Virus record (IMG/VR): IMGVR_UViG_3300042302_000394
Location: 1 to 64,000 of that record
Strand: one strand, 5' to 3'
DNA length: 64,000 bases
Each line of letters starts with the position of its first letter. The stretch's first letter is position 1. A model generated the notes under the pieces. The model searched no databases, was not told the DNA's origin, and saw only the letters and a list, made by a program, of their open reading frames with translations. Shown here piece by piece: positions 26,463-62,501 of the stretch. A program made the translations under genes and the position numbers.

Positions 26463-26492
26463 ATTATACGCACCTACTGCATACAATGTCAA
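26463..26492 (-). promoter_or_regulatory. Sigma70-type promoter; -35 contains the upstream stop codon
   Basis: TTGACA, 18 nt, TATAAT, 6 nt, ATG. Confidence 0.7.
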
Positions 26493-26731
26493 TTATCTAC
26501 GTTAATAAAATCGTCTAAATTCTTATTTTGATTTGCCAACTTTTGATTGGCTTTGATGTGACGGGTAGACTGCTCGGCTTTGTATGCTTCGAGTATTACT
26601 GAAATTTGGTTGCATACTGCGCCCTGTCCGAATCTAGCAGCCAAGAAGTACTTTTTCATTAACTCGGTAATCTTATTGTCGATATCTTCGTTTTTCAACG
26701 TAGACAAATCTGGTAATAACGGATTAAACAT
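26489..26731 (-). CDS. Hypothetical protein (start MFNPLLP at 26731)
   Basis: TAATG coupling to the upstream gene. Confidence 0.6.
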   Translation of the reverse strand: MFNPLLPDLSTLKNEDIDNKITELMKKYFLAARFGQGAVCNQISVILEAYKAEQSTRHIKANQKLANQNKNLDDFINVDN

Positions 26732-27126
26732 TATGATAACGTAACTGAGGTACCAGTAAATGCATACCATGTGCCGCTATGATAATATGCAGGTCTATTG
26801 TATGCTGCGTCTGCAACAAATACCAATGTTCCGTTTTCTACATTTCCGGTATCAGTTAACGCAGATAGCTCGCTTAGACTATAATTTTTTAATACAATTG
26901 AACAATCTACTAAGGTTGCTTTTTTAATTTCATTTCCACCAAAATTATTTGAGCTAGATAGACTTACTAAGTTTACCTGAAGGTTGGAAATTTCTTCTCC
27001 TGTTGTAGACAGTGCTGATTGAATATTAGAAAAGTTAGTTCTAAAACCCTGAGAATCGTTATCAGATCCAGGAACTGGATAGTTGATGTTTATTAAATTG
27101 CTATAATCTGTAATAGTACTTGCCAC
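26731..27126 (-). CDS. Putative tail/baseplate-associated protein
   Basis: YPVPGSDNDSQGFRTNFSNI motif; paralogous to the adjacent gene. Confidence 0.6.
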   Translation of the reverse strand: MASTITDYSNLININYPVPGSDNDSQGFRTNFSNIQSALSTTGEEISNLQVNLVSLSSSNNFGGNEIKKATLVDCSIVLKNYSLSELSALTDTGNVENGTLVFVADAAYNRPAYYHSGTWYAFTGTSVTLS

Positions 27127-27138
27127 AATTAACTCCTG

Positions 27139-27396
27139 TTAAGATGAAGTGTAACTTTTTAATACAATGCTACAATTCACAATAGTTGCATTAGTGACGG
27201 TGTTATCGTTAAAGTTATTATTATCAGTTAAGAACACTCCGTTTGTTTTTAATGCATTAATTTCTCTATTAGCAATTTCTATGGAAGTTTTGATATTAGA
27301 AAAATTATCACGGAATTTTTGAAGGTCGTTGTCTGCACCCTGTACAGGGAAATTAATGTCAATTAAATTACTATAATTTGTGATAGTGCTAGTCAA
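27139..27396 (-). CDS. Shorter tandem paralog of 26731-27126 (TTG start)
   Basis: STITNYSNLIDINFPV.GADND...FRDNFSNI...CSIVLK shared; GGAG SD; TATAAATA upstream. Confidence 0.6.
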   Translation of the reverse strand: MTSTITNYSNLIDINFPVQGADNDLQKFRDNFSNIKTSIEIANREINALKTNGVFLTDNNNFNDNTVTNATIVNCSIVLKSYTSS

Positions 27397-27433
27397 GATT
27401 CAACTCCAGTGATGCTATATTTATAGACAAAAC

Positions 27434-30400: not shown

Positions 30401-30483
30401 GTGTAGTATCAGTACCCGATTTAATATGTTATTTATTATCTTTCAATAACAATAACATTGCGGTTGTTTGCTATTAAATCCTC

Positions 30484-32031
30484 TTAAACCCAGGATTGAA
30501 TGTTGGAACCTGTAGTTCCTACTCTAATCCATGTATCAGTTGCTACACAAACGTAAAGAAAATTTGTGTCATAAGATACAAGCCCAGAAAAACCTGACGA
30601 GTTAGGAAGTTTTGATCCTGTTCCAACTGCTACAGTGCCTGGTGGTCCCGACGGACCTGATGCTCCAGTGGGTCCAGTAGCTCCACTAGGACCTTGTGGT
30701 CCTGTAGCGCCAGATGGTCCACTAGGTCCTGTAGCGCCTACTCCTGATGGTCCACTAGGACCTGATGGTCCTGTTGGTCCAGTTGGTCCAACAAAGCCAA
30801 TTCCGTTGGCGCCCGATGGGCCTGACGGTCCTGTCGGTCCTGTACTACCTGCGGGACCCTGCGGTCCTGTGGCACCTGCGCCCGATGGCCCAGTCGGACC
30901 TGATGGTCCTGCAACAGCACTTGCTGGACCCGGAGGTCCCGACGGTCCTGTTGCACCTTCTGGTCCTGTTGGACCCGACGGTCCTTGTGGCCCTGTAGCA
31001 CCTGCACCTGTGGGTCCTACGTCACCTGGAATTCCTTGAGCACCTGACGGTCCTTGTGGGCCTTGTGGTCCCGTAGTACCACCGCCGGTGCCGCCTGATA
31101 TTGTAACCCATTCGGTGTCATACTCAGTGTTTGATGCTTTGGCTAGAACTTGTCCAGTAAATCCACCTACTGCTATGCCTGTGCCTGTGCTTCCAGGTGC
31201 GCCTGATGGTCCTGATGGTCCTGATGGGCCTGGCAAACCGGGGCTTCCCGGACTACCTGCAGGGCCTTGTGGTCCAGTAGGCCCTGCACCAGCAGTTGTA
31301 CTAGTGTTGACCCATTTAGTACCGTCGTACTTTAAAAACTCTCCGCTAATAGGACTTGTTAGTGTTACATCAGTTAACGAGCTTAATGCAGTTACTCCCG
31401 GTGTTGCAGAACCTAAATTTACAACTCCGAATGTACCATACATGTCACTACTGTTTTCTGCGGCATAATATAGTGTAGATGGAGCGCCTAACGGTACAGC
31501 AAATGTAATTGTTCCCGTGGCTGTGCCATTATTAGTTACACCACTATTATATGTATTTTCAGTTCCTGTAGTAGCCGCAGTTTTAATCCATAACGGATAC
31601 CCAGCAGCATTAACACTGAAGTTATATGTAAATCCTCTTACAAGGTTTAATGTAGGATCATTGAATCCTTCGATAATATAGTCTAAACTACCGTTGTTAG
31701 TAATAGTATATGTAATTCCAAACCCGCCACCTTCTGGTCCAGTTGGACCAGCGTCACCTTGCGGCCCTTGAGGACCAGAAGGCCCAGTTGGACCAGGTAC
31801 TGTACTAGCATCGCCCTGCGGACCTTGTGGTCCTGTTGCACCTTCTGGTCCTTGTGGTCCAGCGCCACCAGCTACTCCGCCATAGGCAAGAGTAGCCCAG
31901 GTCGAAGTGCCGCTGCCTATTTTAAATTGCCCTGTATCTGTTTCTAGGGCCATTTCTCCTTCGGCCAGGACAGGGTTTGCAGAACTCCATTCTGCAGCGG
32001 TACCTCTTCTAAGTTGAATTTGAACAGCCAT
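30484..32031 (-). CDS. Collagen-repeat fibre protein with Mtd-N-like N-terminus
   Basis: [11 protein letters not shown]...NPVLAEGE; three G-X-Y blocks; C-terminal [15 protein letters not shown]. Confidence 0.8.
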
Positions 32032-32062
32032 GTTTGTATTCTTTCCGTATTATCAATATTTA

Positions 32063-41358: not shown

Positions 41359-41559
41359 TTATGTTGTTATTTTAGAAGATTGACGTTTTCGGCACTCCTC
41401 TCTAACCTTAGGAGGAATATCGGGATGCCATTCTGCCATTCCGCAGTCATATACTCGTTGCTGAGGTAAACTGTTTCCAAAAACTATAAGTCCAAACATT
41501 GCTAGAGATAACCCTACAACGATCATAGACAATCCGATCATTTGTAGAGTTTGCTTCAT
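41359..41559 (-). CDS. Small membrane protein
   Basis: TM helix followed by YDC..AE.HPD.P..VREEC. Confidence 0.55.
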   Translation of the reverse strand: MKQTLQMIGLSMIVVGLSLAMFGLIVFGNSLPQQRVYDCGMAEWHPDIPPKVREECRKRQSSKITT

Positions 41560-42776
41560 TTGTATACCTTTAGGATAACAGTATCTTCACTGAACCGGCC
41601 GTTGAGTTGAGTCTCTGTAGTTTTAACACTCTTAGCAAACCAAGTCTCAAAACGCTTCTGTGTATTCTGCTCTTTGAACTCTTTGATCTGCTCTGGCGGC
41701 TTACGCAGGGTCTTCTGAACACTCTTGTCAGTAAAGCCAGTTAGTGTGGTGCCTTTTACACCAAGTCCAACACTGCTGGTAGCAATGTAGTAACCGATCT
41801 TACGAGTCTTTACATTGAACACTGCTACACCACTTGCACCAATAATAGTAGCAGGCGGAGCACTGGTAATGCCAAGTTTAGTGTCGCTCAACATGAACTT
41901 GAGTTTAGCAACAATCTGTTCTGCAGGCTTGACCTTGGCAGCACGAGGCTTCTTCATAACCTTCTGTTCAGCCGCAATCTGCTCACATGCAGCCATAATG
42001 CTTTCGTAGAACTCGATCAGCTTCTTGACATTCTTACGTGGCAGGTGCTTGTAACCCTCACGAAGTTGCTCATCTGCGTTACCGCTAGCCAACTCCATCA
42101 GTTCATCGTGACCTCGCTGGAAGTAACCTTTGATGATACGACTGTGAGCTGCCTTGGCACCCTTGCCTTTGAGCAAGTTCACAACCTTAATGTCTTTAGG
42201 GTTAAACGCTTCTGGGTCTACGATAAAGCTGTCAATGGCTGCATCAATTTCCTCACTCATACCACCTGCGGCTTCACGCAGACGATCTTGAATAGTAGGA
42301 ACATATACATCAGCAGTCTTTACACTTTTAACAGAGTCGTCGCTCTCAACTTCGTCATCCGCACCTTGCTCGATTACTTTGGAAATTTCTTTGCCCAACC
42401 AAGTTGCAGTGTCACGCCCATTGTTAAACCCTGAATGAGTTGATGGCATACCTCGGAGCAAGCAAGCGGCTACTGCACCCATAGTAGTACCACAGCGGCT
42501 GTCTTTAGTATCTTTAAATGCTTTAATAGTAGACTTGTCGTAGCCGTTAGCACCCATCCAGTTAATAACTGAGGGCTTCAATTCTTTAGCAGACTTCTCC
42601 AAACGATACCAAGCCATTGCACCATGGAAGTGACGCATGAATTGATTGTCGCTCCACGATTCTGCACCATCCCACTTTGGGCTATAGTCGCGCTTGGCAT
42701 TCTCACGGATGCTTACGCTAGTGATCTTTTCTTTTTTAACTTTGGGTTTAATCTTAATGCCTGCGACTGTAGCCAT
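41556..42776 (-). CDS. 406-aa early protein of unknown function
   Basis: Long ORF with own sigma70 promoter and AAGGAG SD. Confidence 0.7.
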   Translation of the reverse strand: MATVAGIKIKPKVKKEKITSVSIRENAKRDYSPKWDGAESWSDNQFMRHFHGAMAWYRLEKSAKELKPSVINWMGANGYDKSTIKAFKDTKDSRCGTTMGAVAACLLRGMPSTHSGFNNGRDTATWLGKEISKVIEQGADDEVESDDSVKSVKTADVYVPTIQDRLREAAGGMSEEIDAAIDSFIVDPEAFNPKDIKVVNLLKGKGAKAAHSRIIKGYFQRGHDELMELASGNADEQLREGYKHLPRKNVKKLIEFYESIMAACEQIAAEQKVMKKPRAAKVKPAEQIVAKLKFMLSDTKLGITSAPPATIIGASGVAVFNVKTRKIGYYIATSSVGLGVKGTTLTGFTDKSVQKTLRKPPEQIKEFKEQNTQKRFETWFAKSVKTTETQLNGRFSEDTVILKVYK

Positions 42777-42807: not shown

Positions 42808-42836
42808 ATTATACAGCCAGAACGGCTGTAAGTCAA
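42808..42836 (-). promoter_or_regulatory. Sigma70-type promoter with inverted repeat in spacer; -35 contains the upstream stop
   Basis: TTGACT, 17 nt, TATAAT; TACAGCC-N5-GGCTGTA. Confidence 0.75.
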
Positions 42837-43111
42837 GAGTCGGTAATACCAGTTTTGTCCAAATATTCCGAGTATTTCAACAGGAACATAGTACGCTTTG
42901 GCTCGTTGTAAAAGTCCAAATAGATTGACTCTTTTAGATACTTATGTCCAAAATCTGGATCCATCTTCCATACCCTGTGGGTTCTGCTAGTAAAACCTAA
43001 AACCGATTTCATCTTATTTCGAATTAGTAATACACTAGGCGGGTAATCCTGAGCTATTTGATTATAGATTTTAAGCCATTGTGCCTCGGACAACACTATA
43101 GATCTGCTCAT
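42833..43111 (-). CDS. Hypothetical protein (FxL[KR][WY] family)
   Basis: LDFYNE...MFLLKYS. Confidence 0.6.
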   Translation of the reverse strand: MSRSIVLSEAQWLKIYNQIAQDYPPSVLLIRNKMKSVLGFTSRTHRVWKMDPDFGHKYLKESIYLDFYNEPKRTMFLLKYSEYLDKTGITDS

Positions 43112-44885: not shown

Positions 44886-45572
44886 TTAGTCTTTCTTTTC
44901 GCCAAACAGTTGTAGTAGGCTTAGGAACAAGTTAATAAAATTCAAATACAAGCTCAGTGCTCCGCGAATTTCGGCAACACCATCATTTTCCATTGATACC
45001 TCTTCACGAATACGCTGTGTGTCGTAGGCAGTTAATCCAAGGAACACTAGAATAGCAATGGCCGAAATGACCATTTGAAATACTGTGCTACCAACAAAAA
45101 TATTGATAACGCTGGCAATAATAATGGCAATCAATCCAATTAACAATAGTGATCCAAATCCACTAAGATCCTTTTTAGTAAAGTACCCGTATCCACTCAT
45201 AACACCAAATAGGATCGCACCTCCCATAAAGGCCGATACAATACTGCCCATGTTGTACACCACAAAAATTGTAGCAAAACTAAGCCCCATGAGTGCTGAA
45301 AATATATACAAAAATATCTGTGAGCCCGTTTTACTAAACTTTTCACTGGCTACACTAAATGCCAAAATCAGTAAAAGAGGTGCAAAAATTACTATCCATT
45401 TCATAATACCAGTGAAGAAAAAGGCCATCAATGCTGCATTAGCACTGACCTGATAGCTAGTAAACATTGAAATCAATACCGCAATTGCCATGTGCCCATA
45501 GACCCGACCCATTGCAGAATTGATCTGCTCTGCGTTTCTATAGACACTATTTTCATAAGTTGTCGAATACAT
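44886..45572 (-). CDS. Bax inhibitor-1 / YccA family membrane protein
   Basis: About 7 TM helices; YFTKKDLS, TAYDTQRI, ALSLYLNFINLFL. Confidence 0.9.
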   Translation of the reverse strand: MYSTTYENSVYRNAEQINSAMGRVYGHMAIAVLISMFTSYQVSANAALMAFFFTGIMKWIVIFAPLLLILAFSVASEKFSKTGSQIFLYIFSALMGLSFATIFVVYNMGSIVSAFMGGAILFGVMSGYGYFTKKDLSGFGSLLLIGLIAIIIASVINIFVGSTVFQMVISAIAILVFLGLTAYDTQRIREEVSMENDGVAEIRGALSLYLNFINLFLSLLQLFGEKKD

Positions 45573-45586
45573 ATATATAATCTCCT

Positions 45587-45826
45587 TTAACCTCTAATGG
45601 TTATTTGTGTTTTATTTACAACGGGACCGTCGCTAACGAAGTCTAATCCAGCCATCTTGCCTTCATAAACTTTACCGTTCCATCTCATTGGCATCTTGAT
45701 GCTTTTATTTAATACAACAGTTAGCCGATCTTTATCTTTAAATTCATAGACGGTAGCATCCACTAACTTACTAGTATTTGCCTGCCGCACTTTACATGTT
45801 TCACTATGCCTAATTATATCTGCCAT
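45587..45826 (-). CDS. Hypothetical protein
   Basis: ATG 6 nt after TATAAT. Confidence 0.6.
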   Translation of the reverse strand: MADIIRHSETCKVRQANTSKLVDATVYEFKDKDRLTVVLNKSIKMPMRWNGKVYEGKMAGLDFVSDGPVVNKTQITIRG

Positions 45827-45832
45827 ACGACT

Positions 45833-45861
45833 ATTATATAGTAGATTGTACCAAAAGTCAA
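45833..45861 (-). promoter_or_regulatory. Sigma70-type promoter; -35 contains the upstream stop
   Basis: TTGACT, 17 nt, TATAAT, 6 nt, ATG. Confidence 0.72.
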
Positions 45862-46229
45862 TTGGTTTTGGTAATAAACGGAGTTAATTCTGGAGGCGTC
45901 CAGCCCAAAGGTTTAAGCACTTTTCCATCCTCGCGCTTACGCACCTTGCCTGTTTCTTTGTCAATTTTGGCAAAATTAGTTCTCATGACTTCTTTCCATG
46001 CACCCTCTGCATCTGCGCCCATGCTGTGTAATGCTCCTATTGTAACAACTAAAATATCGACTAGTGCATCGACGGTTTCGACTTTATCGTGTTGGCCTAC
46101 AGCTTCGCCTAATTCTCTACACTCTTCTTCTATTAGCGTCATGTAAAGGTTAAATTGATCTTCGTTAAAGTTATCAACGGTCTGGTCGCAGGCTCGCATA
46201 AACTTTTCCATATCTCTAAAAACATTCAT
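45858..46229 (-). CDS. MazG/PRA-PH-like nucleotide pyrophosphohydrolase
   Basis: LIEEECREL...DALVDILVV...VMRTNFAK...REDGKVLKP..W. Confidence 0.85.
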   Translation of the reverse strand: MNVFRDMEKFMRACDQTVDNFNEDQFNLYMTLIEEECRELGEAVGQHDKVETVDALVDILVVTIGALHSMGADAEGAWKEVMRTNFAKIDKETGKVRKREDGKVLKPLGWTPPELTPFITKTN

Positions 46230-46309
46230 ATTTGGTCCTTTTGTTTTTTATTTTTTCTATTTTGAGCAGCTAGTCTCATTTTTTCTTTAGTTTCGTCGGA
46301 ATGTGTTTG
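46226..46309 (-). pseudogene. Remnant of a NUMOD3-type homing-endonuclease C-terminus
   Basis: Frame reads QTHSDETKEKMRLAAQNRKNKKQKDQI*, with its TGA overlapping the next ATG; no in-frame start upstream of the motif. Confidence 0.5.
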
Positions 46310-47063
46310 TCATATATTCCTTGTTGTAAATTAAATTTTTAATACTTTGAGATCTACTCTTAGAACTCTTTTCCCCTAACACTGCTACTGCAAACATAGT
46401 ATCATTGTGCTTGACCAACATTACTAAGCATCTACCTGCTTTGCTGGTAAAGCCAGTTTTACTAATCAACACATTATAGTTTGTAATATCAGGATTAGTG
46501 TTTCTTACCTGTAATGTTACAGTCTTGTTCCTGTTATTGTCAAACTCTACTTTCTCATTTTCAGCCGATGAAATCTGTGTGATTAGCGTGTATCTACGCA
46601 ACCACCATACAAAATTTACTAGATCATTAGCTGTACTAACATTTCCGGCGCCTATACCACTAGCATCTTCAATACGAGTATTTTTTAGACCGATGTCGCT
46701 TATATGTTCATTGACATAGTTTATAAAGGCAGCGTAGCCACCAGGATGAGCATGTGCTAAACTGTCAGCGGCCCGATTATCGCTGGCGATCAGCATGGCC
46801 TTGATAAGTTCTATTCGGAGAACCTTGGTCTTATTTGGAAATCGTCCTGTTGTAGATCCTTTGACAACGATTGATTCGTTGAGATCAACTCCACTGTCAA
46901 TTACTGCCATTGCTGTAAATAGTTTAGTAACACTGGCAATTGGTACTACTTGATCTTCTCTAACCGCAGCCTCCATTACTGCATCGGTAAAATTATATAG
47001 TGCGGCAGTTGTGGCACCTGCGTTTAGAGAGCAGAACAGAAGAAGGATAGTTAGGATTTTCAT
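46287..47063 (-). CDS. Secreted D-Ala-D-Ala carboxy/endopeptidase (peptidase S11, PBP7-like; start MKILTILL)
   Basis: Signal peptide; SVTK (SxxK), SDN (SxN), KTG; AGRCL. Confidence 0.88.
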   Translation of the reverse strand: MKILTILLLFCSLNAGATTAALYNFTDAVMEAAVREDQVVPIASVTKLFTAMAVIDSGVDLNESIVVKGSTTGRFPNKTKVLRIELIKAMLIASDNRAADSLAHAHPGGYAAFINYVNEHISDIGLKNTRIEDASGIGAGNVSTANDLVNFVWWLRRYTLITQISSAENEKVEFDNNRNKTVTLQVRNTNPDITNYNVLISKTGFTSKAGRCLVMLVKHNDTMFAVAVLGEKSSKSRSQSIKNLIYNKEYMTNTFRRN

Positions 47064-50627: not shown

Positions 50628-50855
50628 TCATTCACTGAGCCCCATAAAAATAAGTTCACGCTCTGTAACATTGGCAACAGGTTTGAGCCAACCGTGACGA
50701 ATACATTCATTGATAATCATCTTGTATTCTTTTGGACAACTTTGATTGATCTCAAATCCTGCTCGAGGTGCCTGCATCAATCCGTCGTAGATTACGAATT
50801 TAGGATCGCTCTGTTTGAGAGTGCGTATTTGACTTTTGTATAGAGTGTATGTCAT
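50628..50855 (-). CDS. Hypothetical protein
   Basis: ATG 6 nt after TATACT. Confidence 0.6.
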   Translation of the reverse strand: MTYTLYKSQIRTLKQSDPKFVIYDGLMQAPRAGFEINQSCPKEYKMIINECIRHGWLKPVANVTERELIFMGLSE

Positions 50856-50861
50856 ACTGCT

Positions 50862-50890
50862 AGTATAGCAGTATTAACATTGCATGTCAA
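50862..50890 (-). promoter_or_regulatory. Sigma70-type promoter; -35 contains the upstream stop; inverted repeat over -10 and start codon
   Basis: TTGACA, 17 nt, TATACT, 6 nt, ATG; ATACTGCTA/TAGCAGTAT (50854-74). Confidence 0.72.
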
Positions 50891-51621
50891 CGGTCTATCC
50901 AGTCTTTATTACGGTAAGGTTTACCAATGGCTGCTTGCGGTAGATATCGAACTACTTTCTTTTTTAATCGTTGAATAATGGGATGGTTGTGATCGTGTTG
51001 GAATGCTCTTAAATACATTCTCCAACTGTTGTGACGTCGTCTGATGCCTTTTTGGTTTTCACTTAGGTAGTCGACGATTTGGTCCACATCACCTTTAAAT
51101 TTGTCTATTAATTCACAAGCGATATTGAATCCGTATGCATCTATTTCATCGGAACAGCCCAAATAACTCTGCTCCATTTGCACTTCTGTTTTGTTTGCAG
51201 TGCTGGCATAATCTGGAATAATTTTAAATTTACGCCTACGATACTGCCTCATGTGTATCAATTCGTGTAGTAGGGTGTCTGCTACTGTATAACACATTCC
51301 CTTGTAGCGTTTTTTAGTTATGCATATATGCTCGTCAAACAACGAATAAACAAATATTATCTCTACAGCCTTCTTTTTATCTTGGTCCCACTCACTATAA
51401 TATGTTCCGCCCACCCAAACTTGATTGGATTCTACTTTAAAATTAGTACTTCGTTTAAACCTAACTGGCGCTAATTTTTTTAAATGATTGGTAATTTTGC
51501 TGTGGAATTTTTCTATAGTAAGCTGTTGCCCGACTAATTCCGGATAAAGAGAGTACAGGAAACTGGCGATAGTTTCTCGATCTAGCATAGACCAATTGAA
51601 TCGTACTCTTGGTGTAGTCAT
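50887..51621 (-). CDS. Zincin-like (HExxH) putative metalloprotease
   Basis: LLHELIHMRQY...EIDAY; TAAATA upstream. Confidence 0.6.
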   Translation of the reverse strand: MTTPRVRFNWSMLDRETIASFLYSLYPELVGQQLTIEKFHSKITNHLKKLAPVRFKRSTNFKVESNQVWVGGTYYSEWDQDKKKAVEIIFVYSLFDEHICITKKRYKGMCYTVADTLLHELIHMRQYRRRKFKIIPDYASTANKTEVQMEQSYLGCSDEIDAYGFNIACELIDKFKGDVDQIVDYLSENQKGIRRRHNSWRMYLRAFQHDHNHPIIQRLKKKVVRYLPQAAIGKPYRNKDWIDR

Positions 51622-51641: not shown

Positions 51642-52175
51642 TTAGTTATCACTTACACTTTCATTATGTGCTACTTTAATGACGCTAAGACCACTCTTCT
51701 CTAAAAATTCTACGCCCGCCATGTCCCTATAACTATTGCGATAGTATACGCTAGATATGCCGCTTTGGTATATAAGTTTGGCACAATCCAAACAAGGAGC
51801 GTGAGTAATAAAAATATCAGCATCACGGCCGCTTTGGCTCGACTTGGCCAGCTTCGCAATCGCATTGGATTCAGCATGTAATACCTCTGGTTTAGTTTTT
51901 AATCCGTAACGAACATTTCGTTGAGCACCTTCGTGCCATCCTTCGTGCGGGTACTTAGCATCGAACTCCTCTGGGTCAAGCCAACCACCTGCACCCGAAT
52001 CCCAAACTTTATCTTCACAGTCATTATCCCAGCCCGCAGGCATTCCGTTGTAGCCGTAGCTAATAACTGAACCATCTTTAACAATAACCGCACCTACCTG
52101 AAGTCTAATGGCGTGGCTAAGTTCAGCAGCTCTTAAAGCCCAATCCATATACATGTCTATGTATTTTTCTTTCAT
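51642..52175 (-). CDS. dCMP deaminase (ComEB family)
   Basis: VGAVIV, GYNG, HAESNA, PCLDC. Confidence 0.92.
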   Translation of the reverse strand: MKEKYIDMYMDWALRAAELSHAIRLQVGAVIVKDGSVISYGYNGMPAGWDNDCEDKVWDSGAGGWLDPEEFDAKYPHEGWHEGAQRNVRYGLKTKPEVLHAESNAIAKLAKSSQSGRDADIFITHAPCLDCAKLIYQSGISSVYYRNSYRDMAGVEFLEKSGLSVIKVAHNESVSDN

Positions 52176-56887: not shown

Positions 56888-57064
56888 TTAAAAAAGAATT
56901 ACAAGCACTGTCATCAACATTACTGCTGCCAGTGATACAAGTATACTATAGCCTATGCTTTTTGTCAAGGCCAATTGTTCCTTGCCTTCCATATTTCTCA
57001 TAGCACGAATGCCAAAATGTATCAGAACAGCAAGGATAGCAAATGCAAACCAAAGTTTAATCAT
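56888..57064 (-). CDS. Small two-TM protein upstream of SPFH (58 aa)
   Basis: Manual translation MIKLWFAFAILAV... Confidence 0.5.
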   Translation of the reverse strand: MIKLWFAFAILAVLIHFGIRAMRNMEGKEQLALTKSIGYSILVSLAAVMLMTVLVILF

Positions 57065-57069
57065 TTTGA

Positions 57070-58125
57070 TTATCCTTTAGTTGGGAAAGGCCAATCACTG
57101 CCTTGTGCCCTAAACACAGTTCCAGGAGGTGGTGTCACCTTACCATCAGTATTGCGAGTCCAACCAGTTGGTTGCACATAACGATACCGTGCTGGATCAC
57201 CGTTTTCGCGATCTTCCACACCGGCCTCGTATCCAACGTCATATGCATTGTGTTCTCTGGAACCATAGTTGTATGAATTGCTATAGTCTGCACCAGAGAA
57301 GCCGTCACTATAACCACGCTTATGGATACTTGAACCGACTCGGACTTCTGGCGCAGGCTTAGCCGCACGTACAGTTTCAGTACTGTTGGCATTGCTCTGT
57401 ACAGGCTTGTCAAAAGCATCCCTTGCTTCACCGCCCATTTCACCAATAACTTCATATCGGCAAGCACGACCCTTGGCACCATTGTAGTCACTTGGGATTG
57501 AAACAACATCAGCTGGATCAATCTTAACAATTACCACACGGCTGTCATTACCACCAAAGTGGTCCAAGTAACTCAAACCGCAGAAGTGGAGACCAGTACT
57601 GCAAGTTTGATCCTTGTTGTCGTCAACAGCGTTGCGTTCCATTTCGACAACAGTACCCGGGCTATTGTCCATAGTACCACTGTGAATGTCTTTGAAGTCT
57701 CGGCGTACTTTCTTGTAGGCAAGGAAGTAACCATCGGGAGTGATGGGCAAACTGTTCTTTTCCAAGAAGCCATAGAGTTCATCTACTGAACGCTTTGAAG
57801 GGTTCTTCATCAAGTTGTGCATGAACAGAACCATTGGCTCAATAGTAAAGCCATCCTGCAACATGGTAATCATACGGCTTGCCAATACACCTGCAAAAGG
57901 TTGTCCTTTCCAGAACAGTTGTTCGCCTTTGACAGAGATGTTGCCAGCACCGTAGTTCAGCACAACCTTGACTGGGTCAATAATGTTTTTAACAGTGTCC
58001 CAGTCTTGTGCTTTAATAGCATCAACTACCTTTTGGTAAGTGACGTGGGTCTTAGAAATCGTATGTGGTTTGCCGTCAATAACGACAGTAACATTCGAAC
58101 CTTGAAGAATAAACGGATAACTCAT
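57070..58125 (-). CDS. rIIB: rIIB-like protein (start MSYPF) with extra C-terminal domain
   Basis: NPS...LYGFL...ITPDG..LAYK, CSTGLH, DVVSIP.DY..KGR.C.YEV; follows rIIA. Confidence 0.88.
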   Translation of the reverse strand: MSYPFILQGSNVTVVIDGKPHTISKTHVTYQKVVDAIKAQDWDTVKNIIDPVKVVLNYGAGNISVKGEQLFWKGQPFAGVLASRMITMLQDGFTIEPMVLFMHNLMKNPSKRSVDELYGFLEKNSLPITPDGYFLAYKKVRRDFKDIHSGTMDNSPGTVVEMERNAVDDNKDQTCSTGLHFCGLSYLDHFGGNDSRVVIVKIDPADVVSIPSDYNGAKGRACRYEVIGEMGGEARDAFDKPVQSNANSTETVRAAKPAPEVRVGSSIHKRGYSDGFSGADYSNSYNYGSREHNAYDVGYEAGVEDRENGDPARYRYVQPTGWTRNTDGKVTPPPGTVFRAQGSDWPFPTKG

Positions 58126-58126
58126 T

Positions 58127-60304
58127 TTAAATACCTTTCTTTGCATCAATTAAATTTACATACTCGGCAATATCGCTTGCCTCTACGCGGTAAGTACTCA
58201 AACTAGTCAACAACGGATAACGGCTGTTAACTGTGTTGAGTTCTGTTTGATACTTGGTCACAAGTGCTTCTGGGCTAAGGTTAGCTGTAGGAGCAAACTT
58301 GCGGAACAGTCTATCAATATTGTAGCGGTTTCCTGTGAACTTGTCAACCTTTACAAACACTGAAACCAGTTTAGCGTAAGGACTGTTGGCATCAATTTCA
58401 GCCAAAATATCTTTATTGTGGATGCCGTTGATAACATCGGCCCCCTCTAATGCACTCTTAACCAAACTCATCAACAGTTTGGAATTGTCCTTAGCAGCCA
58501 ACTGATCAACAATGTGTTCTTCAAAGTTCTTCCAGTTTGGCTTCTTCTTGATATCTTCAATGTCGCTCTTACGTACACCGTAGATCTCACCGTTGAACAA
58601 ATTGTGCAAGCTCTTGACATCTTCATGCATGTCCTTACCGCTAGTATAGCCTTTGGCACTTAGCATTGTGAAGCCGCTCAATGGTACATAGTAGTAGGTT
58701 TCTGTAGTGACAAACTTGCTAGTATCGCCTGCGGCACGCCAGACCATATCTTGCTCATCACGACGATAGCCACCGCCACCACGACGTTCCAACTTGAGAA
58801 TTGAAACGTTCTTACCCATGTTCTCACGTTCACGTTGCTTCAAGGTACTTGCGACAAAGCGACGAGCAAGCGGAGGTTCTTGGATAGCGGCAAAGAAAGA
58901 CTTGGTATCCATGTCCTTAGTCTTGTCTGCCTTTTCCAAAATCCAGATAGCACGGCTGTAAACATCGCAACCAGTTTCACGATAGTGATAACGAGCACGT
59001 TCGCCGGCACCGGTCTTTAAATCATTGATGATGAAGTGACTGGCGTCATCAACCTGCACATGCCATTCTTGCCAAGTGATGTAATGTCCGGCAGCATTTT
59101 TTGCATGTCCGGGAGCGTACTCTGTAGTGCTCTTACCAGTGGTCACAGCCTTGTTATGACGAGTCTGATGCAACTGTCGAATCTGGATGTTATAGTTAGC
59201 AGCCAGGTCCTCTACTTTAAACTCAAACCGCTTCAAACGGTTGTACTGTTTGTCGTCATAAGTAGGCAAAGCAGTGTCTTGAGCATACTTGCTCACAGCC
59301 GCGGTCCACAGTCGATGCTCTTTCTTCTTGAACAAGAACACAGCACGATCCCACAGGTTCTCAATAGCATCTGCTTCCTTGGCAATGACCACAGTCAACG
59401 CCGCATTGACTGCTTCCAATTTACGTTTGATAGCCGCAACAGTTGATGGGATGTAACTGAGGCCTTCGCGGCTGGCTTGGAAGTCCAGTTCGCCAATACC
59501 AAAGTGCATTTCCAAACCGCAGATCAACAACTGCTTCAACTCAGGCGGAATAGATCCGTCAGCGTTAGGCACCTCGATAGGATAAGCAATATTGCCCATA
59601 ATGGCTGCACTGTTACTGCGATCCTTGAAACTATGCACACCGGGAACAATGTCGCGGCTTTCGTACTCAGCATCAACAAACTGGAAATCGGAACTGCCAG
59701 AAACAACCGGACGGAGAGCAAAGTGTTTGTAGACAACTCGAGCTTCTTGTCGGAACTTGTCAAAGTCGTAACGATCGTTGACGGAAAACTTAACTTCAAC
59801 ACCAGCAGGCTCGTCTGTAGCTTCCTGCATCATCAAGGCAATGCTGGGCACGCCTTCCCCGTTGATAAAAGCTGAGTAGATACCCTTAACGCCGTTTTGG
59901 ATAGCAGTCACAGTGAAGTTGTCAGTGTAGCTGAACGGACTCTTTGAACCCAACCCCAGCGCACCAATAAACTCGTTGGAGTTTGTTTTAGTACTTTCAA
60001 AGTAAGTGGTGTAGATTTGGGTAACTTGCTGATGACTCAAGCCAGTGCCGTAGTCACGGATGGCAAAGTGCGGCTCCAATGTGTTGGGCAAATGCACATC
60101 AAACGGAGTGTCTTTCTTACCTGCGGCTGCATGGCTGTCCACAGCATTGCAACTCAATTCGCGGATGATAGCACGGATCTTGTTAGCATACAAGCCCGAA
60201 CTCAAAATGCTGAACGCTTTGGCAGAATTGCGAATACGGAACTCGCCAATTTCTGCTACGTTAGAAACAATAGCTTCGTTAACTGGAGCATTGTTGAGAA
60301 TCAT
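58127..60304 (-). CDS. rIIA: rIIA-like GHKL ATPase
   Basis: LSSGLY..K..AIIRELSCNAVDSH, IRDYGTG, GALGLGSKSPFSY, SREGL. Confidence 0.9.
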   Translation of the reverse strand: MILNNAPVNEAIVSNVAEIGEFRIRNSAKAFSILSSGLYANKIRAIIRELSCNAVDSHAAAGKKDTPFDVHLPNTLEPHFAIRDYGTGLSHQQVTQIYTTYFESTKTNSNEFIGALGLGSKSPFSYTDNFTVTAIQNGVKGIYSAFINGEGVPSIALMMQEATDEPAGVEVKFSVNDRYDFDKFRQEARVVYKHFALRPVVSGSSDFQFVDAEYESRDIVPGVHSFKDRSNSAAIMGNIAYPIEVPNADGSIPPELKQLLICGLEMHFGIGELDFQASREGLSYIPSTVAAIKRKLEAVNAALTVVIAKEADAIENLWDRAVFLFKKKEHRLWTAAVSKYAQDTALPTYDDKQYNRLKRFEFKVEDLAANYNIQIRQLHQTRHNKAVTTGKSTTEYAPGHAKNAAGHYITWQEWHVQVDDASHFIINDLKTGAGERARYHYRETGCDVYSRAIWILEKADKTKDMDTKSFFAAIQEPPLARRFVASTLKQRERENMGKNVSILKLERRGGGGYRRDEQDMVWRAAGDTSKFVTTETYYYVPLSGFTMLSAKGYTSGKDMHEDVKSLHNLFNGEIYGVRKSDIEDIKKKPNWKNFEEHIVDQLAAKDNSKLLMSLVKSALEGADVINGIHNKDILAEIDANSPYAKLVSVFVKVDKFTGNRYNIDRLFRKFAPTANLSPEALVTKYQTELNTVNSRYPLLTSLSTYRVEASDIAEYVNLIDAKKGI

Positions 60305-60342
60305 GTAAAACCTTTCAGTAGTGTGTTTGTCTGTATGTATAT

Positions 60343-60381
60343 ATTATACAAGAAAAAACCAACCCTGTCAAGAGTTGGTTT
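60343..60381 (-). terminator. Terminator whose loop is the -35 box of the rIIA promoter
   Basis: AAACCAACTC-TTGACA-GGGTTGGTTT-TTT; TTGACA, 17 nt, TATAAT (60343-48). Confidence 0.78.
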
Positions 60382-60388
60382 GTCCAAA

Positions 60389-60592
60389 TTATCTACCCAC
60401 TGCAATCAATCGAATTCGTAATGCGTTCAAACTTGACTGGATGGTCATAAGTTCTGCCAACGCCTTAGTGTAGTGACCGTTAGGATGTTTATCATGTCCC
60501 AGTTTACGATCTACGCCTAGAGCCATTTTTACACTGGCAATGGCTGTGTCAACTGCTTCAATTCTTGCTTCGAGTTTTTCTAAATCTGTCAT
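60389..60592 (-). CDS. Small coiled-coil protein
   Basis: Coupled ORF. Confidence 0.55.
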   Translation of the reverse strand: MTDLEKLEARIEAVDTAIASVKMALGVDRKLGHDKHPNGHYTKALAELMTIQSSLNALRIRLIAVGR

Positions 60593-60798
60593 TTTCTTTT
60601 TCCAATCTTGTCTACAACATCGGCCTTGCTCTGTAGCAGTTGGGCACGGAAGCGACGATAAACTCGCAGTGAAGCGACACTCATAGGATCTTCCTTGCCC
60701 TCCAACTCTGCTATCTTAGCATCCAGTTCGGCTTCGTGGGCACGATGACGTTCGACATCTGCCTTGAGCCCTTTCGCATCACCCCAGAAGAATTTCAT
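60589..60798 (-). CDS. Small coiled-coil protein
   Basis: Coupled ORF. Confidence 0.55.
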   Translation of the reverse strand: MKFFWGDAKGLKADVERHRAHEAELDAKIAELEGKEDPMSVASLRVYRRFRAQLLQSKADVVDKIGKRK

Positions 60799-60799
60799 A

Positions 60800-61093
60800 T
60801 CATCCCCACTTTAAAATAAAGAACACAGCGTCCTTTTCGTTTTTAAATCTATACTCAAAGGGTCCAGTACTCCAGCGAGGATTATTATATCCTTCGTTTC
60901 TGTGTCCGAAATACTTTGAGCACCATGCCATCATCTCATCCTTTTCTTCCCACCAATCACCGCCTGAATAATACACAGTGTATTTCTGGGGAGCAAGTTC
61001 TTCTCGAACCCGCAGTTCTAAACTACGGGGCCGTTTAGTAAACCAGTTCATAGGAGTATGCGGATAAAAACTATTAACGTCTAAATCAATCAT
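60800..61093 (-). CDS. Hypothetical protein (FxLKW family)
   Basis: WC..YFG...RW...FKNEKDAVFFILKWG. Confidence 0.6.
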   Translation of the reverse strand: MIDLDVNSFYPHTPMNWFTKRPRSLELRVREELAPQKYTVYYSGGDWWEEKDEMMAWCSKYFGHRNEGYNNPRWSTGPFEYRFKNEKDAVFFILKWG

Positions 61094-61626
61094 ACACCTA
61101 CGAACCGGCTGGCTTCGGCGTGCAACCCTGCGTCACCCTTGGTCATCACAGCCAACAACAATCTCTTTTCCTCCAAGTAGGTCTTGGCGAAAGCAGGATC
61201 GTGAGCCATGATGCTACGGCTGTTGCTGATCAAATCTGCCAACTTGATGGTCTGTGCTTCGGCGGGCGCTCTTGCAGTATGCTCACGGTCTATTGCCTTG
61301 CGGTGGGCACGATTGCCATCATGCGGTTGGCTAACATCAGTCAACCATCCAACCAAGGTAGCAACATCGATACCAAAGGCCATGTGGATGTCAGTGTATG
61401 TGCAACCAGTGTCTTCCACAACATCATGCAACCAAGCAGCCGCAACCATATCAGGAGTGCTACCCGGAACGCCTGCTACGATCTTGGCAACTTCAGCCGG
61501 GTGGACAATGTAGGGTTCGTTAGTGTACTTACGCCTCTGTCCAACTGCGGCGTGAGCAGCCATGGCATAGACTTGCGCCTTACGGACTACATCAAATCCG
61601 CTGAGATCCATTGTAAAATCTTCCAT
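61090..61626 (-). CDS. Mesh1/SpoT-like HD-domain small alarmone hydrolase
   Basis: AH...QRRK...PYIVHP, AAWLHDVVEDT, V..LTD, IKLAD..N. Confidence 0.85.
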   Translation of the reverse strand: MEDFTMDLSGFDVVRKAQVYAMAAHAAVGQRRKYTNEPYIVHPAEVAKIVAGVPGSTPDMVAAAWLHDVVEDTGCTYTDIHMAFGIDVATLVGWLTDVSQPHDGNRAHRKAIDREHTARAPAEAQTIKLADLISNSRSIMAHDPAFAKTYLEEKRLLLAVMTKGDAGLHAEASRFVGV

Positions 61627-61652
61627 GCTGCTCTCCTTGTTAATAAGTATAT

Positions 61653-61681
61653 ATTATAGCATGGATTTACCATGCTGTCAA
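61653..61681 (-). promoter_or_regulatory. Sigma70-type promoter with inverted repeat in spacer; -35 contains the upstream stop
   Basis: TTGACA, 17 nt, TATAAT; AGCATGG-N5-CCATGCT. Confidence 0.78.
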
Positions 61682-61908
61682 CCGGAAGTTTTAACCACTT
61701 CCAGGATGGTAATTTCTACTACTAAATGCTTACGCAGTAGCATGAACTTTTTGAACTTGGCTTCTATGTCCGCCTGAATGTACTCGTCATGGTAAGGCAT
61801 AGTAGCAACGTCCTCATAGGGTTCATCGTTTTCGTTTAACGCTATGAAACTGAGCTTCACTGTGCCCTGTTCGGGCTCTTTGAACATTTTAACAAATTTG
61901 TTGAACAT
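61678..61908 (-). CDS. Hypothetical protein
   Basis: TAAATA 5 nt upstream. Confidence 0.55.
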   Translation of the reverse strand: MFNKFVKMFKEPEQGTVKLSFIALNENDEPYEDVATMPYHDEYIQADIEAKFKKFMLLRKHLVVEITILEVVKTSG

Positions 61909-61916
61909 GCAAATAT

Positions 61917-62462
61917 TTAGTGATGCCCTTTAATTTCGTTATCTTTAATCATACGAACTGCCCGATCCATGGAGATTACAATTTCCCCAGTTGAGTCCAT
62001 ACCCACATCCATGCAACGATATTTTTCCATGCCTGTAGTGCCACCGTGCAAGTGACCGTGAAAGTGCAGAGAACCACGATGCATCTGATCCCATTCATAG
62101 ATAGGATAGTGAAACATCACGCACTTGTGGCCATCATAGGTGATATCCAAATACTTATGTACTTCAACAAATGCATCGCGGAATGTTACATCCATTAGGG
62201 TCTTGCGGTCATGGTTGCCTTCTACAAGGATCTTATCTCCGTTCAACCGATTCATCATTCGTCCAGCATCACTTCCTGACATAAACGCTACATCGCCTAA
62301 GATGTAGACTAAATCACCCGGCTCTACTTTGTCGTTCCATTCTTCCGCCATTGCGTTATTCATATAAGCAACATCGTCACGAAATCGTGCCCGTGTTTGC
62401 GGACAGAACTTCATAATGTTCTTGTGCCCGAAATGGAGATCCGAAGTAATCCAAGTTTTCAT
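61917..62462 (-). CDS. Calcineurin-like metallophosphoesterase
   Basis: SDLHFGH, LGD, GNHD, HYP, HGHLH, DVG. Confidence 0.9.
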   Translation of the reverse strand: MKTWITSDLHFGHKNIMKFCPQTRARFRDDVAYMNNAMAEEWNDKVEPGDLVYILGDVAFMSGSDAGRMMNRLNGDKILVEGNHDRKTLMDVTFRDAFVEVHKYLDITYDGHKCVMFHYPIYEWDQMHRGSLHFHGHLHGGTTGMEKYRCMDVGMDSTGEIVISMDRAVRMIKDNEIKGHH

Positions 62463-62472
62463 ATTATTTCCT

Positions 62473-62501
62473 ATTATACAGCCAGTGACCTATACCGTCA
62501 A
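62473..62501 (-). promoter_or_regulatory. Sigma70-type promoter; -35 contains the upstream stop
   Basis: TTGACG, 17 nt, TATAAT; overlapped by a GCCAGT(T)GAC/GTCACTGGC repeat. Confidence 0.7.

What the first reader, a model, noticed from the sequence alone, without database searches (positions are those of the whole stretch)
26463..62501. Six sigma70-type promoters whose -35 box (TTGAC) supplies the TGA stop codon of the upstream gene, several with stem-loops
Seen: genes ending at 26489, 42833, 45858, 50887, 61678 and 62498 all stop at the TGA inside TTGACA/TTGACT/TTGACG. Each is followed 17-18 nt later by TATAAT/TATACT. Four carry inverted repeats in or over the spacer (42812-30, 50854-74, 61658-76, ~62481-506); the repeats differ in sequence. 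Inference: either extreme compaction or cassette boundaries, where genes are gained or lost by recombination at promoter-stem-loop elements, conceptually like the PeSL promoter/stem-loop cassettes described in T4-type phages.
Basis: partly seen in the sequence, partly recalled or inferred. Interest (0 to 1): 0.62.

Follow-up and report, generated by a model that had tools for sequence, protein, structure and literature searches.

The report
Compact phage early promoters overlapping gene ends
The six sites are real, near-consensus bacterial-type promoters of an uncultured freshwater giant phage, packed so tightly between early genes that the promoter's own TTGACA box supplies the upstream gene's stop codon; this is an ordinary kind of element in an unusually compact form.

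Summary
On the minus strand, six ORFs end at the TGA inside TTGAC(A/T/G). A TATAAT or TATACT box follows after 17 nt (18 at 26492).

The sites belong to a family of about 51 near-consensus sigma70-type promoters in the 208-kb IMG/VR contig, against about 1 expected in shuffles. All are co-oriented with genes. The phage is a lake-water jumbo phage, distantly related to PA5oct- and T4-type phages.

TGA-in-box is the commonest way an upstream gene ends at these promoters: 14 of 84 in two lineages. In 36 relatives of one promoter, the stop falls at +1, +5, +6, +9, +11 or +12, or upstream of the box. So the overlap is a labile by-product of compaction.

Three of the six also have the downstream ATG exactly 6 nt after the -10 box, which predicts leaderless mRNA. 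The whole 31-nt intergenic gap is then promoter.

The anatomy matches PeSL elements. Single cases show indels ending 4 nt upstream of a -35 box. Enrichment of breakpoints at promoters is only borderline, and the six elements share 14 nt or less of identity. No RNA data exist.

The parts
26463..26492 (-). Promoter P26492. -35 TTGACA 26492-26487, whose TGA 26491-26489 is the stop of ORF 26489..26770. 18-nt spacer. -10 TATAAT 26468-26463. ATG of the downstream gene (25938..26456) starts 6 nt after the -10 box, the predicted +1. A 16-bp RNA hairpin spans 26493-26458.
   Evidence: z -6.9. Relatives G002 and G003 keep both genes adjacent but have no promoter here, only a 17-nt gap and their own TAA.
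42808..42836 (-). Promoter P42836. -35 TTGACT 42836-42831, with TGA 42835-42833 as the stop of ORF 42833..43111. -10 TATAAT 42813-42808. Spacer hairpin ACAGCC-GTTCT-GGCTGT at 42830-42812. SD AAGGAG and the ATG of the 406-aa gene 41556..42776 follow.
   Evidence: z -3.3. A promoter is present upstream of this gene in all 36 relatives checked. The stop position is labile and the hairpin is not conserved.
45833..45861 (-). Promoter P45861. -35 TTGACT 45861-45856, with TGA 45860-45858 as the stop of the MazG-like gene 45858..46229. -10 TATAAT 45838-45833. ATG of the 79-aa ORF (45587..45826) starts 6 nt after the -10 box. No significant hairpin.
   Evidence: z -0.7. The same geometry (stop in box, 17 nt, TATAAT, 6 nt, ATG) is conserved in L049 at about 70% nt identity, with an unrelated spacer. 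In L050 and L073 the 79-aa gene sits elsewhere without a promoter. In G002 and G003 the MazG-like gene lies at another locus with its own TAA.
50849..50890 (-). Promoter P50890. -35 TTGACA 50890-50885, with TGA 50889-50887 as the stop of ORF 50887..51621. -10 TATACT 50867-50862. Hairpin 50880-50849 (core 50873-50855) covers the -10 box and +1. ATG of the 75-aa ORF (50628..50855) starts 6 nt after the -10 box.
   Evidence: z -3.3. Identical in G001. In G002 and G003 the upstream gene has its own TGA and a different downstream neighbour.
61653..61681 (-). Promoter P61681. -35 TTGACA 61681-61676, with TGA 61680-61678 as the stop of the 76-aa ORF 61678..61908. -10 TATAAT 61658-61653. Spacer hairpin AGCATGG-TAAAT-CCATGCT at 61676-61658. 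SD AAGGAG and the ATG of the HD-phosphohydrolase gene 61090..61626 follow.
   Evidence: z -2.5. The stop-in-box is conserved in G003. G001 has a 796-nt cassette inserted, with its right breakpoint 4 nt upstream of the -35 box. G002 lacks the 76-aa gene. The G001-type junction appears as a loose end at 61685 in lake run X9.
62473..62510 (-). Promoter P62501. -35 TTGACG 62501-62496, with TGA 62500-62498 as the stop of the AAA_33 kinase-like gene 62498..62962. -10 TATAAT 62478-62473. Hairpin 62510-62476 encloses the -35 box. ATG of the phosphoesterase gene 61917..62462 starts 10 nt after the -10 box, so the leader is very short or absent.
   Evidence: z -2.6. G002 and G003 have their own TAA, then 12 nt, then a different element (GC stem with the -35 box in its loop, followed by a T-run) and an extra downstream gene.
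60343..60381 (-). An intrinsic-terminator stem at 60381-60356 holds the -35 TTGACA (60371-60366) in its loop. Its T-run forms the spacer. -10 TATAAT 60348-60343.
   Evidence: found by both the terminator scan and the promoter scan; z -4.6. A paralogue at 126640 carries two compensatory stem changes. Relatives carry either this form or a GGTAAAACC-spacer form.
25225..25253 (-). Same family: promoter TTGACG-N17-TATACT with a stem across the -35 box and a T-run in the spacer. The ATG starts 6 nt after the -10 box.
   Evidence: Orthologous elements in G002 and G003 keep the hairpin, the T-run and the 6-nt distance to the ATG.
63454..63482 (-). Same family: perfect TTGACA-N17-TATAAT upstream of gene 62963..63430. 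The spacer holds TGGTAAAG.

Best explanation
The six sites are host-RNA-polymerase (primary sigma, sigma70-type) early promoters of an uncultured freshwater jumbo phage. They sit in a densely packed, highly mosaic early-gene region.

TTGACA contains TGA. With a 17-nt spacer this TGA is in frame with the TAA of TATAAT. So any upstream ORF that abuts the promoter in that frame ends inside the -35 box at no cost to either function. ORFs in the other two frames must code through the spacer or stop earlier.

The stop-in-box arrangement is therefore a labile by-product of compaction and junction formation. In half of the six sites the compaction goes further: the downstream ATG lies at the predicted transcription start (leaderless), so the whole 31-nt intergenic gap is promoter.

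Hairpins that overlap about a fifth to a quarter of these promoters most likely act on read-through RNA from the upstream gene, as terminators, attenuators or 3'-end stabilisers. This is clearest where a GC stem encloses the -35 box and its T-run forms the spacer.

Shown: sequence anatomy, statistical excess, conservation, and gene-order differences among relatives. Inferred: promoter activity, start sites, leaderless translation and hairpin function.
For: - Abundance: 51 sites with at most 1 mismatch against about 1 per strand in shuffles, all co-oriented with genes. The related records G001-G003 show the perfect pattern on the gene strand only (14/0, 16/0 and 0/20 forward/reverse; reversed-pattern control 0).
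- Conservation: a promoter lies upstream of the 406-aa gene in 36 of 36 relatives down to 51% aa identity, and upstream of rIIA in 11 of 11 distinct relatives. The hexamers are about 95-100% conserved and the spacers about 50-58%.
- Labile stop: in those relatives the upstream stop is at +1 in about 7 of 21 variants, at +5 to +12 in 9 (all three frames), and upstream in 6. One-nt indels just before the -35 box shift the frame.
- Stop positions across two lineages: 14 at +1, 7 deeper in the promoter, and 30 at -60 to -3 with even frames.
- Leaderless geometry: 10 of 51 promoters have an ATG 5-7 nt after the -10 box that opens the gene, against 2.9% at random positions. This is conserved at three loci in relatives.
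- Hairpins: 21% of 84 promoters have z < -2 against 5% of controls. One composite element was found independently by the terminator scan.
- Distant cultured relative: in PA5oct, TTGAC and TATAATA motifs lie around transcription start sites taken from RNA-Seq (PMC7318152).
Against: - No RNA evidence exists. All 24 runs that hold the sequence are lake DNA metagenomes kept as contigs. The host is unknown.
- The pile-up at +1 (14, against 7 in the other two frames together) exceeds a frame-neutral expectation (p = 0.002). So something beyond passive truncation, whether selection or a junction-forming process, favours this frame.
- Most hairpins lack a canonical U-tract, so terminator function is uncertain.
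- The hairpin at the 42836 promoter is not conserved.
Confidence: 0.75

Rival explanations
1. The elements are PeSL-type mobile regulatory cassettes. Recombination between promoter/stem-loop elements, possibly through excised mini-circles, inserts, deletes and swaps the flanking genes. The stop-in-box junctions are scars of such events.
For: - G001 carries a 796-nt cassette (its own consensus promoter plus a 2OG-Fe(II) oxygenase gene). Its right end lies 4 nt upstream of the -35 box of the 61681 promoter. The promoter-plus-leader of the cassette is about 90% identical over about 40 nt to the one it sits beside.
- Both forms coexist in one lake sample.
- Three states exist at this site: G002 lacks the 76-aa gene.
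- At 45858, 50887 and 62498 the gene's C-terminus and its downstream neighbour differ from G002 and G003 exactly at the promoter edge.
- 4 of 15 G000/G001 events have a breakpoint at a promoter, against 9.8% under a gene-boundary null (p = 0.05) and 4.8% under a uniform null (p = 0.005).
- The cluster at 198-208 kb shares 20-31-nt exact matches between elements.
Against: - G002/G003: 2 of 16 events, about expectation.
- Adjacency-break against promoter Fisher tests are not significant.
- Indels of similar size sit at promoter-less junctions: the ATGA overlap at 60589-60592 and the 3' end of the deaminase gene near 51.7 kb.
- The six flagged elements share only 10-14 nt of exact identity with any other element.
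- The 79-aa gene exists without a promoter in L050 and L073.
- The 26492 promoter was gained or lost with no change of gene order.
- No mini-circle evidence is obtainable from contigs.
Confidence: 0.3
2. The overlap is a chance or ORF-calling artefact. Any open frame that runs into TTGACA is cut by its TGA, so the ends at TGA are not real gene ends.
For: TGA in the box necessarily truncates one frame in three. About one third of the overlapping variants upstream of the 406-aa gene use it.
Against: - The upstream ORFs are conserved proteins whose orthologues end within 0-3 codons of the same position, at their own stops.
- Several have Pfam or PHROG matches running to their C-termini.
- The promoters are about 50-fold over expectation.
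- The TGA frame is over-represented.
Confidence: 0.03
3. The conserved boxes and spacer motifs are read mainly by a phage-encoded factor (its own sigma or an early-promoter regulator binding TGGTAAAACC), not by the host primary sigma alone.
For: TGGTAAA occurs 12 times within the 51 elements. 10 of these are at spacer position 9-10, out of 65 occurrences in the contig. The motif also recurs about 15 nt upstream of the -35 box in many relatives, in coding and non-coding contexts.
Against: - The hexamers are the textbook sigma70 consensus at optimal spacing.
- The motif is absent from most of the six flagged sites (no exact TGGTAAAAC in the window).
- Fixed-register covariation around the motif is not significant.
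- No candidate factor was identified.
Confidence: 0.15

Closest known systems
PeSL (promoter-early stem-loop) elements of T4-type phages RB49/phi1, T4/PST and KVP40/nt-1 (Arbiol et al. 2010, PMC2839356; Comeau et al. 2014, PMC4122927)
   Same: - Near-perfect TTGACA-N17-TATAAT early promoters, repeated many times in the variable early regions.
[quoted passage not shown]
- A composite promoter-terminator character.
- Single indels between close relatives that end at the element.
   Different: - In phi1/RB49 the upstream stop lies in an AT-rich non-coding stretch before the -35 box. Here it is inside the box and the upstream stretch is coding.
- PeSLs end in an SD and a start codon. Three of the six sites here have the ATG at the predicted +1.
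- PeSL copies are conserved over about 100 bp. The six elements here share 14 nt or less.
- Only about a fifth to a quarter of this phage's promoters carry a significant hairpin.
- Mini-circles and promoter or terminator activity are untested.
- The phage is only distantly related to T4-type phages (rIIA about 28-37% identical to cultured phages).
Early promoters of Pseudomonas jumbo phage PA5oct (Lood et al. 2020, PMC7318152)
   Same: It is among the closest cultured relatives by rIIA and ClpA-like ATPase. It has 32 putative promoters with TTGAC and TATAATA motifs around transcription start sites taken from RNA-Seq, and it depends on the host transcription machinery.
   Different: No stop-codon overlap, leaderless starts or promoter-embedded hairpins were found in the parts of that paper read here. 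Protein identity is only 28-42%.
Leaderless phage transcripts (lambda cI from PRM, from my own knowledge; leaderless transcripts are mentioned for the jumbo phages AR9 and phiKZ, PMC5312081 and PMC8244752, seen only as search hits)
   Same: An ATG at the transcription start with no SD.
   Different: Here it is predicted from geometry only, at about 20% of strong promoters, and combined with a stop codon in the -35 box.

Membership tests
PeSL (Arbiol 2010; Comeau 2014) | Strong sigma70-like early promoter consensus (TTGACA-N17-TATAAT) | tested here: met
   All six sites match 11-12 of 12 positions. 51 such sites lie in the contig against about 1 expected.
PeSL (Arbiol 2010; Comeau 2014) | A stable stem-loop within or beside the promoter | tested here: met
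   Met for five of the six sites, z -2.5 to -6.9; 45861 has none. Genome-wide only 21% of promoters have z < -2 against 5% of controls. So it holds for a subset, not the whole promoter family.
PeSL (Arbiol 2010; Comeau 2014) | Upstream gene's stop codon in an AT-rich non-coding region before the -35 box | tested here: not met
   In the six sites the stop is inside the -35 box and the upstream 40 nt are coding.
PeSL (Arbiol 2010; Comeau 2014) | Shine-Dalgarno and start codon at the 3' end of the element | tested here: inconclusive
   SD plus ATG at 42836 and 61681. ATG 6 nt after the -10 box without an SD at 26492, 45861 and 50890. ATG 10 nt after the -10 box at 62501.
PeSL (Arbiol 2010; Comeau 2014) | Copies conserved over tens of bases, enough for homologous exchange | tested here: not met
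   The six share 10-14-nt exact matches with their best partner. The cluster at 198-208 kb, outside the window, shares 20-31 nt.
PeSL (Arbiol 2010; Comeau 2014) | Association with indels or replacements between closely related genomes | tested here: inconclusive
   Clear single cases exist. Enrichment is 4 of 15 (p = 0.05 against the gene-boundary null), 2 of 16 (about expectation), and Fisher tests are not significant.
PeSL (Arbiol 2010; Comeau 2014) | Formation of circular excision products (mini-circles) | not testable with these tools
   Only assembled contigs of DNA runs were available.
PeSL (Arbiol 2010; Comeau 2014) | Measured promoter and terminator activity | not testable with these tools
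   No RNA runs hold the sequence.
Intrinsic (rho-independent) terminator overlapping a promoter | GC-rich stem followed by a T-run | tested here: not met
   None of the six flagged sites has a T-run after its stem (sequences). The feature is met by neighbouring family members: 60381-60356, 25253, and 126640, 202975 and 207231 outside the window.

The most novel reading that the evidence does not exclude
This freshwater jumbo-phage lineage uses a minimal form of the promoter/stem-loop cassette. The whole intergenic gap (31 nt) is the promoter. The upstream gene stops in the -35 box, and the downstream gene is translated from a leaderless mRNA that begins at its ATG. About one in five strong promoters works this way. 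New junctions made by gene shuffling survive preferentially when the incoming ORF lands in the TGA frame. That would explain the excess at +1.
Probability: 0.35. Interest if true: 0.55.

Novelty: new member of a known kind. Interest (0 to 1): 0.4.

Why it matters
- It extends promoter/stem-loop early-gene architecture, described so far for T4-type phages, to an uncultured lake jumbo phage and about 50 metagenomic relatives.
- It gives a concrete set of promoters, with predicted start sites, that would organise the annotation of a large block of unknown early genes.
- The predicted leaderless class is testable. If real, it would bear on which hosts these phages infect and how early genes are translated.
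- The stop-in-box overlap itself is a consequence of packing and needs no new mechanism.

Tried and rejected
- Near-identity DNA search of 12 kb against cultured phage records: no match.
- Pfam Gp23 search in the contig: nothing, but the control genomes did not ring either, so it is uninformative. The contig is estimated 58% complete.
- tRNA scan of the window: none. The 40 tRNAs lie outside it, 39 of them in an array at 83-92 kb.
- Exact TGGTAAAAC in the window: none.
- Gene-adjacency-break against promoter presence (Fisher) for three relatives: not significant. About 75% of junctions are broken against the 62%-identity relatives, so that comparison has no power.
- Fixed-register covariation around the GGTAAAACC spacer motif: not above shuffles. 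I therefore treat it as a sequence motif, not a proven stem.
- Sense against antisense folding energy of promoter regions: only a weak trend (p = 0.08). RNA-level and DNA-level structure is undecided overall.
- Search for RNA runs: none. Reads could be laid only as contigs, which cannot show transcript ends or mini-circles.
- Two literature searches, one on stop codons overlapping -35 boxes in phages and one on leaderless transcripts in jumbo phages. Neither hit list named a paper on the overlap, and none of those papers was opened for it.
Full report
**What the window is.** The window is bases 1-64000 of a 207,813-bp IMG/VR virus record (CheckV completeness 58%, GC 40.8%). Almost all genes in the window lie on the minus strand. 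Recognisable genes are:
- rIIA (58127-60304) and rIIB (57070-58125);
- a ClpA/Lon-like ATPase;
- tail-fibre and baseplate-like proteins;
- dCMP deaminase, a MazG-like pyrophosphohydrolase, an HD phosphohydrolase and an AAA_33 kinase-like protein.

The best cultured matches are distant. rIIA is 28-37% identical to PA5oct-like Pseudomonas phages and to Aeromonas and Microcystis phages. The ATPase is about 42-44% identical to PA5oct, Atu_ph07 and others. There is no near-identical DNA among cultured phage records. The sequence occurs in many lake-water and freshwater metagenomes.

**The observation.** All six coordinates check out on the minus strand. The TGA inside TTGACA, TTGACT or TTGACG is the stop of ORFs 26489..26770, 42833..43111, 45858..46229, 50887..51621, 61678..61908 and 62498..62962. 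TATAAT follows after 17 nt, except for an 18-nt spacer at 26492 and TATACT as the -10 box at 50890. The tool's own promoter scan puts these sites at the top of its list with 11-12 of 12 matches.

The 26492 site has a fifth and stronger one, a 16-bp stem with G.U pairs from the -35 box to +1 (z -6.9). The 45861 site has none.

**They are members of a large family.** With at most one mismatch to TTGACA-N17(+-1)-TATAAT, the contig holds 51 sites against about 0.6-1 per strand in shuffles. All are co-oriented with the local genes. The related records G001, G002 and G003 show the same picture: 14, 16 and 20 perfect sites on the gene strand, none on the other strand and none for the reversed control pattern.

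A cluster of 18 sites at 198-208 kb, outside the window, consists of near-identical promoter-plus-leader cassettes of about 60 nt. Several other sites lie in or beside the 39-gene tRNA array at 83-92 kb.

**Is stop-in-box more than chance?** TTGACA holds TGA in one frame. With a 17-nt spacer the TAA of TATAAT is in the same frame, so the two other frames meet no stop in either box.

In the contig plus G002 (84 non-redundant strong promoters), the upstream co-directional stop lies as follows:
- at +1 (the box TGA) in 14;
- deeper inside the promoter in 7;
- at -60 to -3 in 30, with even frames (9, 9 and 12).

Among ORFs that reach the box, 14 of 21 are in the TGA frame (p = 0.002 against 1/3). 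So the spike at +1 is real. It is larger than passive truncation alone predicts.

The 406-aa gene (41556-42776) gives the best view of how this comes about. A consensus promoter lies upstream of it in all 36 IMG/VR relatives checked, down to 51% aa identity. In about 21 distinct variants the upstream ORF ends at +1 (about 7), at +5, +6, +9, +11 or +12 (9, using all three frames), or upstream of the box (6). Variants of the same upstream protein differ by 1-nt indels just before the -35 box, and these shift where the ORF stops.

The hexamers are 95-100% conserved while the spacers are about 50% conserved. That figure is partly by construction, because sites were found with a TTGAC...TA...T pattern. 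Every locus had one, however, and the unconstrained box positions are conserved too.

The overlap is therefore a labile by-product of ORFs being packed against a conserved promoter. The box TGA is the cheapest stop.

TGA is a true stop here. Orthologues end within 0-3 codons at their own TAA or TGA, and there is no suppressor tRNA among the 40 tRNAs.

**Compaction goes further: predicted leaderless starts.** At 26492, 45861 and 50890, and at 25253 in the window, the ATG of the downstream gene begins exactly 6 nt after the -10 box. That is the expected +1, and there is no SD.

Genome-wide, 10 of 51 strong promoters have an ATG 5-7 nt after the -10 box that opens an ORF of at least 40 codons, against 2.9% at random positions.

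The geometry is conserved in relatives:
- L049, at about 70% nt identity, keeps stop-in-box, 17 nt, TATAAT, 6 nt and ATG at the 45861 site, with an unrelated spacer.
- G002 and G003 keep the 6-nt distance at the orthologues of the 25253 promoter. G002 keeps it at the orthologue of the 127223 promoter.
- The ATG at 26456 is the conserved start of that gene in G002 and G003.

This remains inference from geometry. No RNA data exist.

**Hairpins.** Over 84 promoters, 21% fold with z < -2 against 5% of random 52-mers. Mean z is -0.99 against -0.15. With the boxes fixed and only the spacer shuffled, mean MFE is -3.07 against -1.52.

Two geometries occur.
- (A) A GC stem holds the -35 box in its loop and its T-run forms the spacer. 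This is a textbook intrinsic terminator fused to a promoter. Examples are 60381-60343 upstream of rIIA, found independently by the terminator scan, and 25253. The paralogue at 126640 differs by two compensatory stem changes.
- (B) A stem lies inside the spacer or over the -10 box, as at 42836, 61681 and 50890.

Type B stems are not followed by a U-run. The 42836 stem is not conserved among relatives. A recurrent spacer motif, GGTAAAACC, shows no significant fixed-register covariation. The hairpins are thus a real but facultative feature. I take termination or attenuation of read-through as the likeliest role, firmly for type A and weakly for type B.

**Comparison with relatives: cassette boundaries?** G001 (69.6 kb, about 92-99% nt identity) differs from the contig by 15 structural events.

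At the 61681 promoter it carries a 796-nt insert. The insert holds its own consensus promoter and a 2OG-Fe(II) oxygenase gene. Its right end lies 4 nt upstream of the -35 box. Its left end replaces the last two codons of the 76-aa gene, whose stop stays at the same position. The insert's promoter-plus-leader is about 90% identical over about 40 nt to the resident one. G003 keeps the stop-in-box state and G002 lacks the 76-aa gene altogether. In lake run X9 a minor contig (depth about 3 against 31) ends at 61685 and continues with the G001-type insert sequence. So both forms coexist.

The other flagged sites compare as follows.
- 45858: the MazG-like gene sits at another locus in G002 and G003, with its own TAA. 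In the contig it is three residues longer and reads into the box.
- 45858, downstream gene: in L050 and L073 the 79-aa gene lies elsewhere without a promoter.
- 62498 and 50887: G002 and G003 have their own stops and different downstream content.
- 26489: the promoter is present or absent between the same two genes.
- 42833: the arrangement is stable in G002 and G003.

Set against these cases are several negatives.
- Indels of similar size occur at promoter-less junctions. Three small genes are inserted at the ATGA overlap at 60589-60592, where lake samples also show two alternative neighbours. An 18-kb opposite-strand module is inserted at the 3' end of the deaminase gene near 51.7 kb, and L007 shows a third variant there.
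- Statistically, 4 of 15 G000/G001 events have a breakpoint within -12 to +35 of a strong promoter. Expectation is 9.8% if breakpoints fall at random gene boundaries (p = 0.05) and 4.8% if uniform (p = 0.005). Three of the four lie in the tRNA array.
- For G002 against G003 it is 2 of 16, about expectation.
- Adjacency tests are not significant.
- The six flagged elements share only 10-14 nt of exact identity with any other element in the contig.

So the early region is strongly mosaic at gene boundaries in general. Promoters are sometimes exactly at the junction. I cannot show that they are the agents of exchange.

**Comparison with the known.** Arbiol et al. 2010 (PMC2839356) describe PeSLs in RB49/phi1 as near-perfect sigma70 promoters with a stem-loop. 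[quoted passage not shown] The upstream stop sits in an AT-rich region, and an SD and start codon close the 3' end. The elements are conserved over about 100 bp, associated with indels, and able to form mini-circles. Comeau et al. 2014 (PMC4122927) call them composite promoter-terminator motifs and extend them to T4/PST and KVP40/nt-1.

The present elements match in promoter consensus, stem-loop positions and composite terminator character. They differ in four ways: the stop lies in the box, three sites have leaderless starts, there is little inter-copy homology, and hairpins are facultative. Activity and mini-circles are untested.

PA5oct, a distant cultured relative, has TTGAC and TATAATA motifs around transcription start sites taken from RNA-Seq (PMC7318152). 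This supports the promoter reading by analogy.

**Verdict.** The kind is known: phage early promoters of the promoter/stem-loop type. This is a new lineage carrying a notably compact form.

Noticed in passing
window 26454-26456, 45824-45826, 50853-50855, and about 25217-25219; also contig 112465, 127223, 143435, 198431, 204736, 205999, 206814: The ATG of the downstream gene lies exactly 5-7 nt after the -10 box with no SD, so leaderless mRNAs are predicted. This holds for 10 of 51 strong promoters against 2.9% at random positions. It is conserved at three loci in relatives.
   Followed up: partly
window 60343-60381 and 25225-25260; contig 126640, 202975, 207231: Composite terminator-promoters: a GC stem holds the -35 box in its loop and its T-run serves as the promoter spacer. 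The paralogues at 60371 and 126640 differ by two compensatory stem changes.
   Followed up: partly
contig 198431-207644 (outside the window); spacers at window 61681 and 63482; upstream of the -35 box in L050, L058, L068, L070, L071: A conserved TGGTAAAACC motif occurs either at spacer positions 4-12 or about 15 nt upstream of the -35 box, in coding and non-coding contexts. It may be a factor-binding or UP-like element. Flanking covariation is not significant.
   Followed up: partly
window 63668 to contig 82511; window 51653-51724: An approximately 18.8-kb stretch (63668-82511), which appears from crude ORF calls to be largely plus-strand, is missing at that position in G001 (92-99% identical elsewhere). 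G001 instead has an 18.3-kb insert at the 3' end of the dCMP-deaminase gene, partly matching that stretch (about 70% identical) in inverted orientation. L007, 99.9% identical, shows a third sequence at the same breakpoint.
   Followed up: partly
window 60589-60606: Three small genes (77, 72 and 65 aa) are inserted in G001 exactly at an ATGA stop/start overlap with no promoter. Lake contigs show two different alternative continuations at 60605/60606.
   Followed up: partly
contig 83070-92415 (outside the window): An array of 39 tRNA genes on the gene strand, with several consensus promoters in or beside it. It is rearranged between the contig and G001, and some breakpoints lie 1-6 nt from a -35 box.
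   Followed up: no
window 44886-47063: A four-gene block: an S11 D-Ala-D-Ala carboxypeptidase-like gene, a MazG-like gene, a 79-aa ORFan and a Bax1-I/YccA-like membrane protein. It lies between two genes that are adjacent in G002 and G003. The order of its genes differs in L050 and L073.
   Followed up: partly
window 25938-26456: A 172-aa protein matches only a piece of the DNA polymerase III alpha NTPase domain (PF07733 positions 16-94; PHROG 11127, full length). It is a stand-alone small protein of unclear role.
   Followed up: no
whole contig: TAG is a rare stop: 9 of 290 called genes, against TAA 196 and TGA 85. No suppressor tRNA was found.
   Followed up: no
window 6028-12648: A 2206-aa ORF on the minus strand, not examined.
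   Followed up: no
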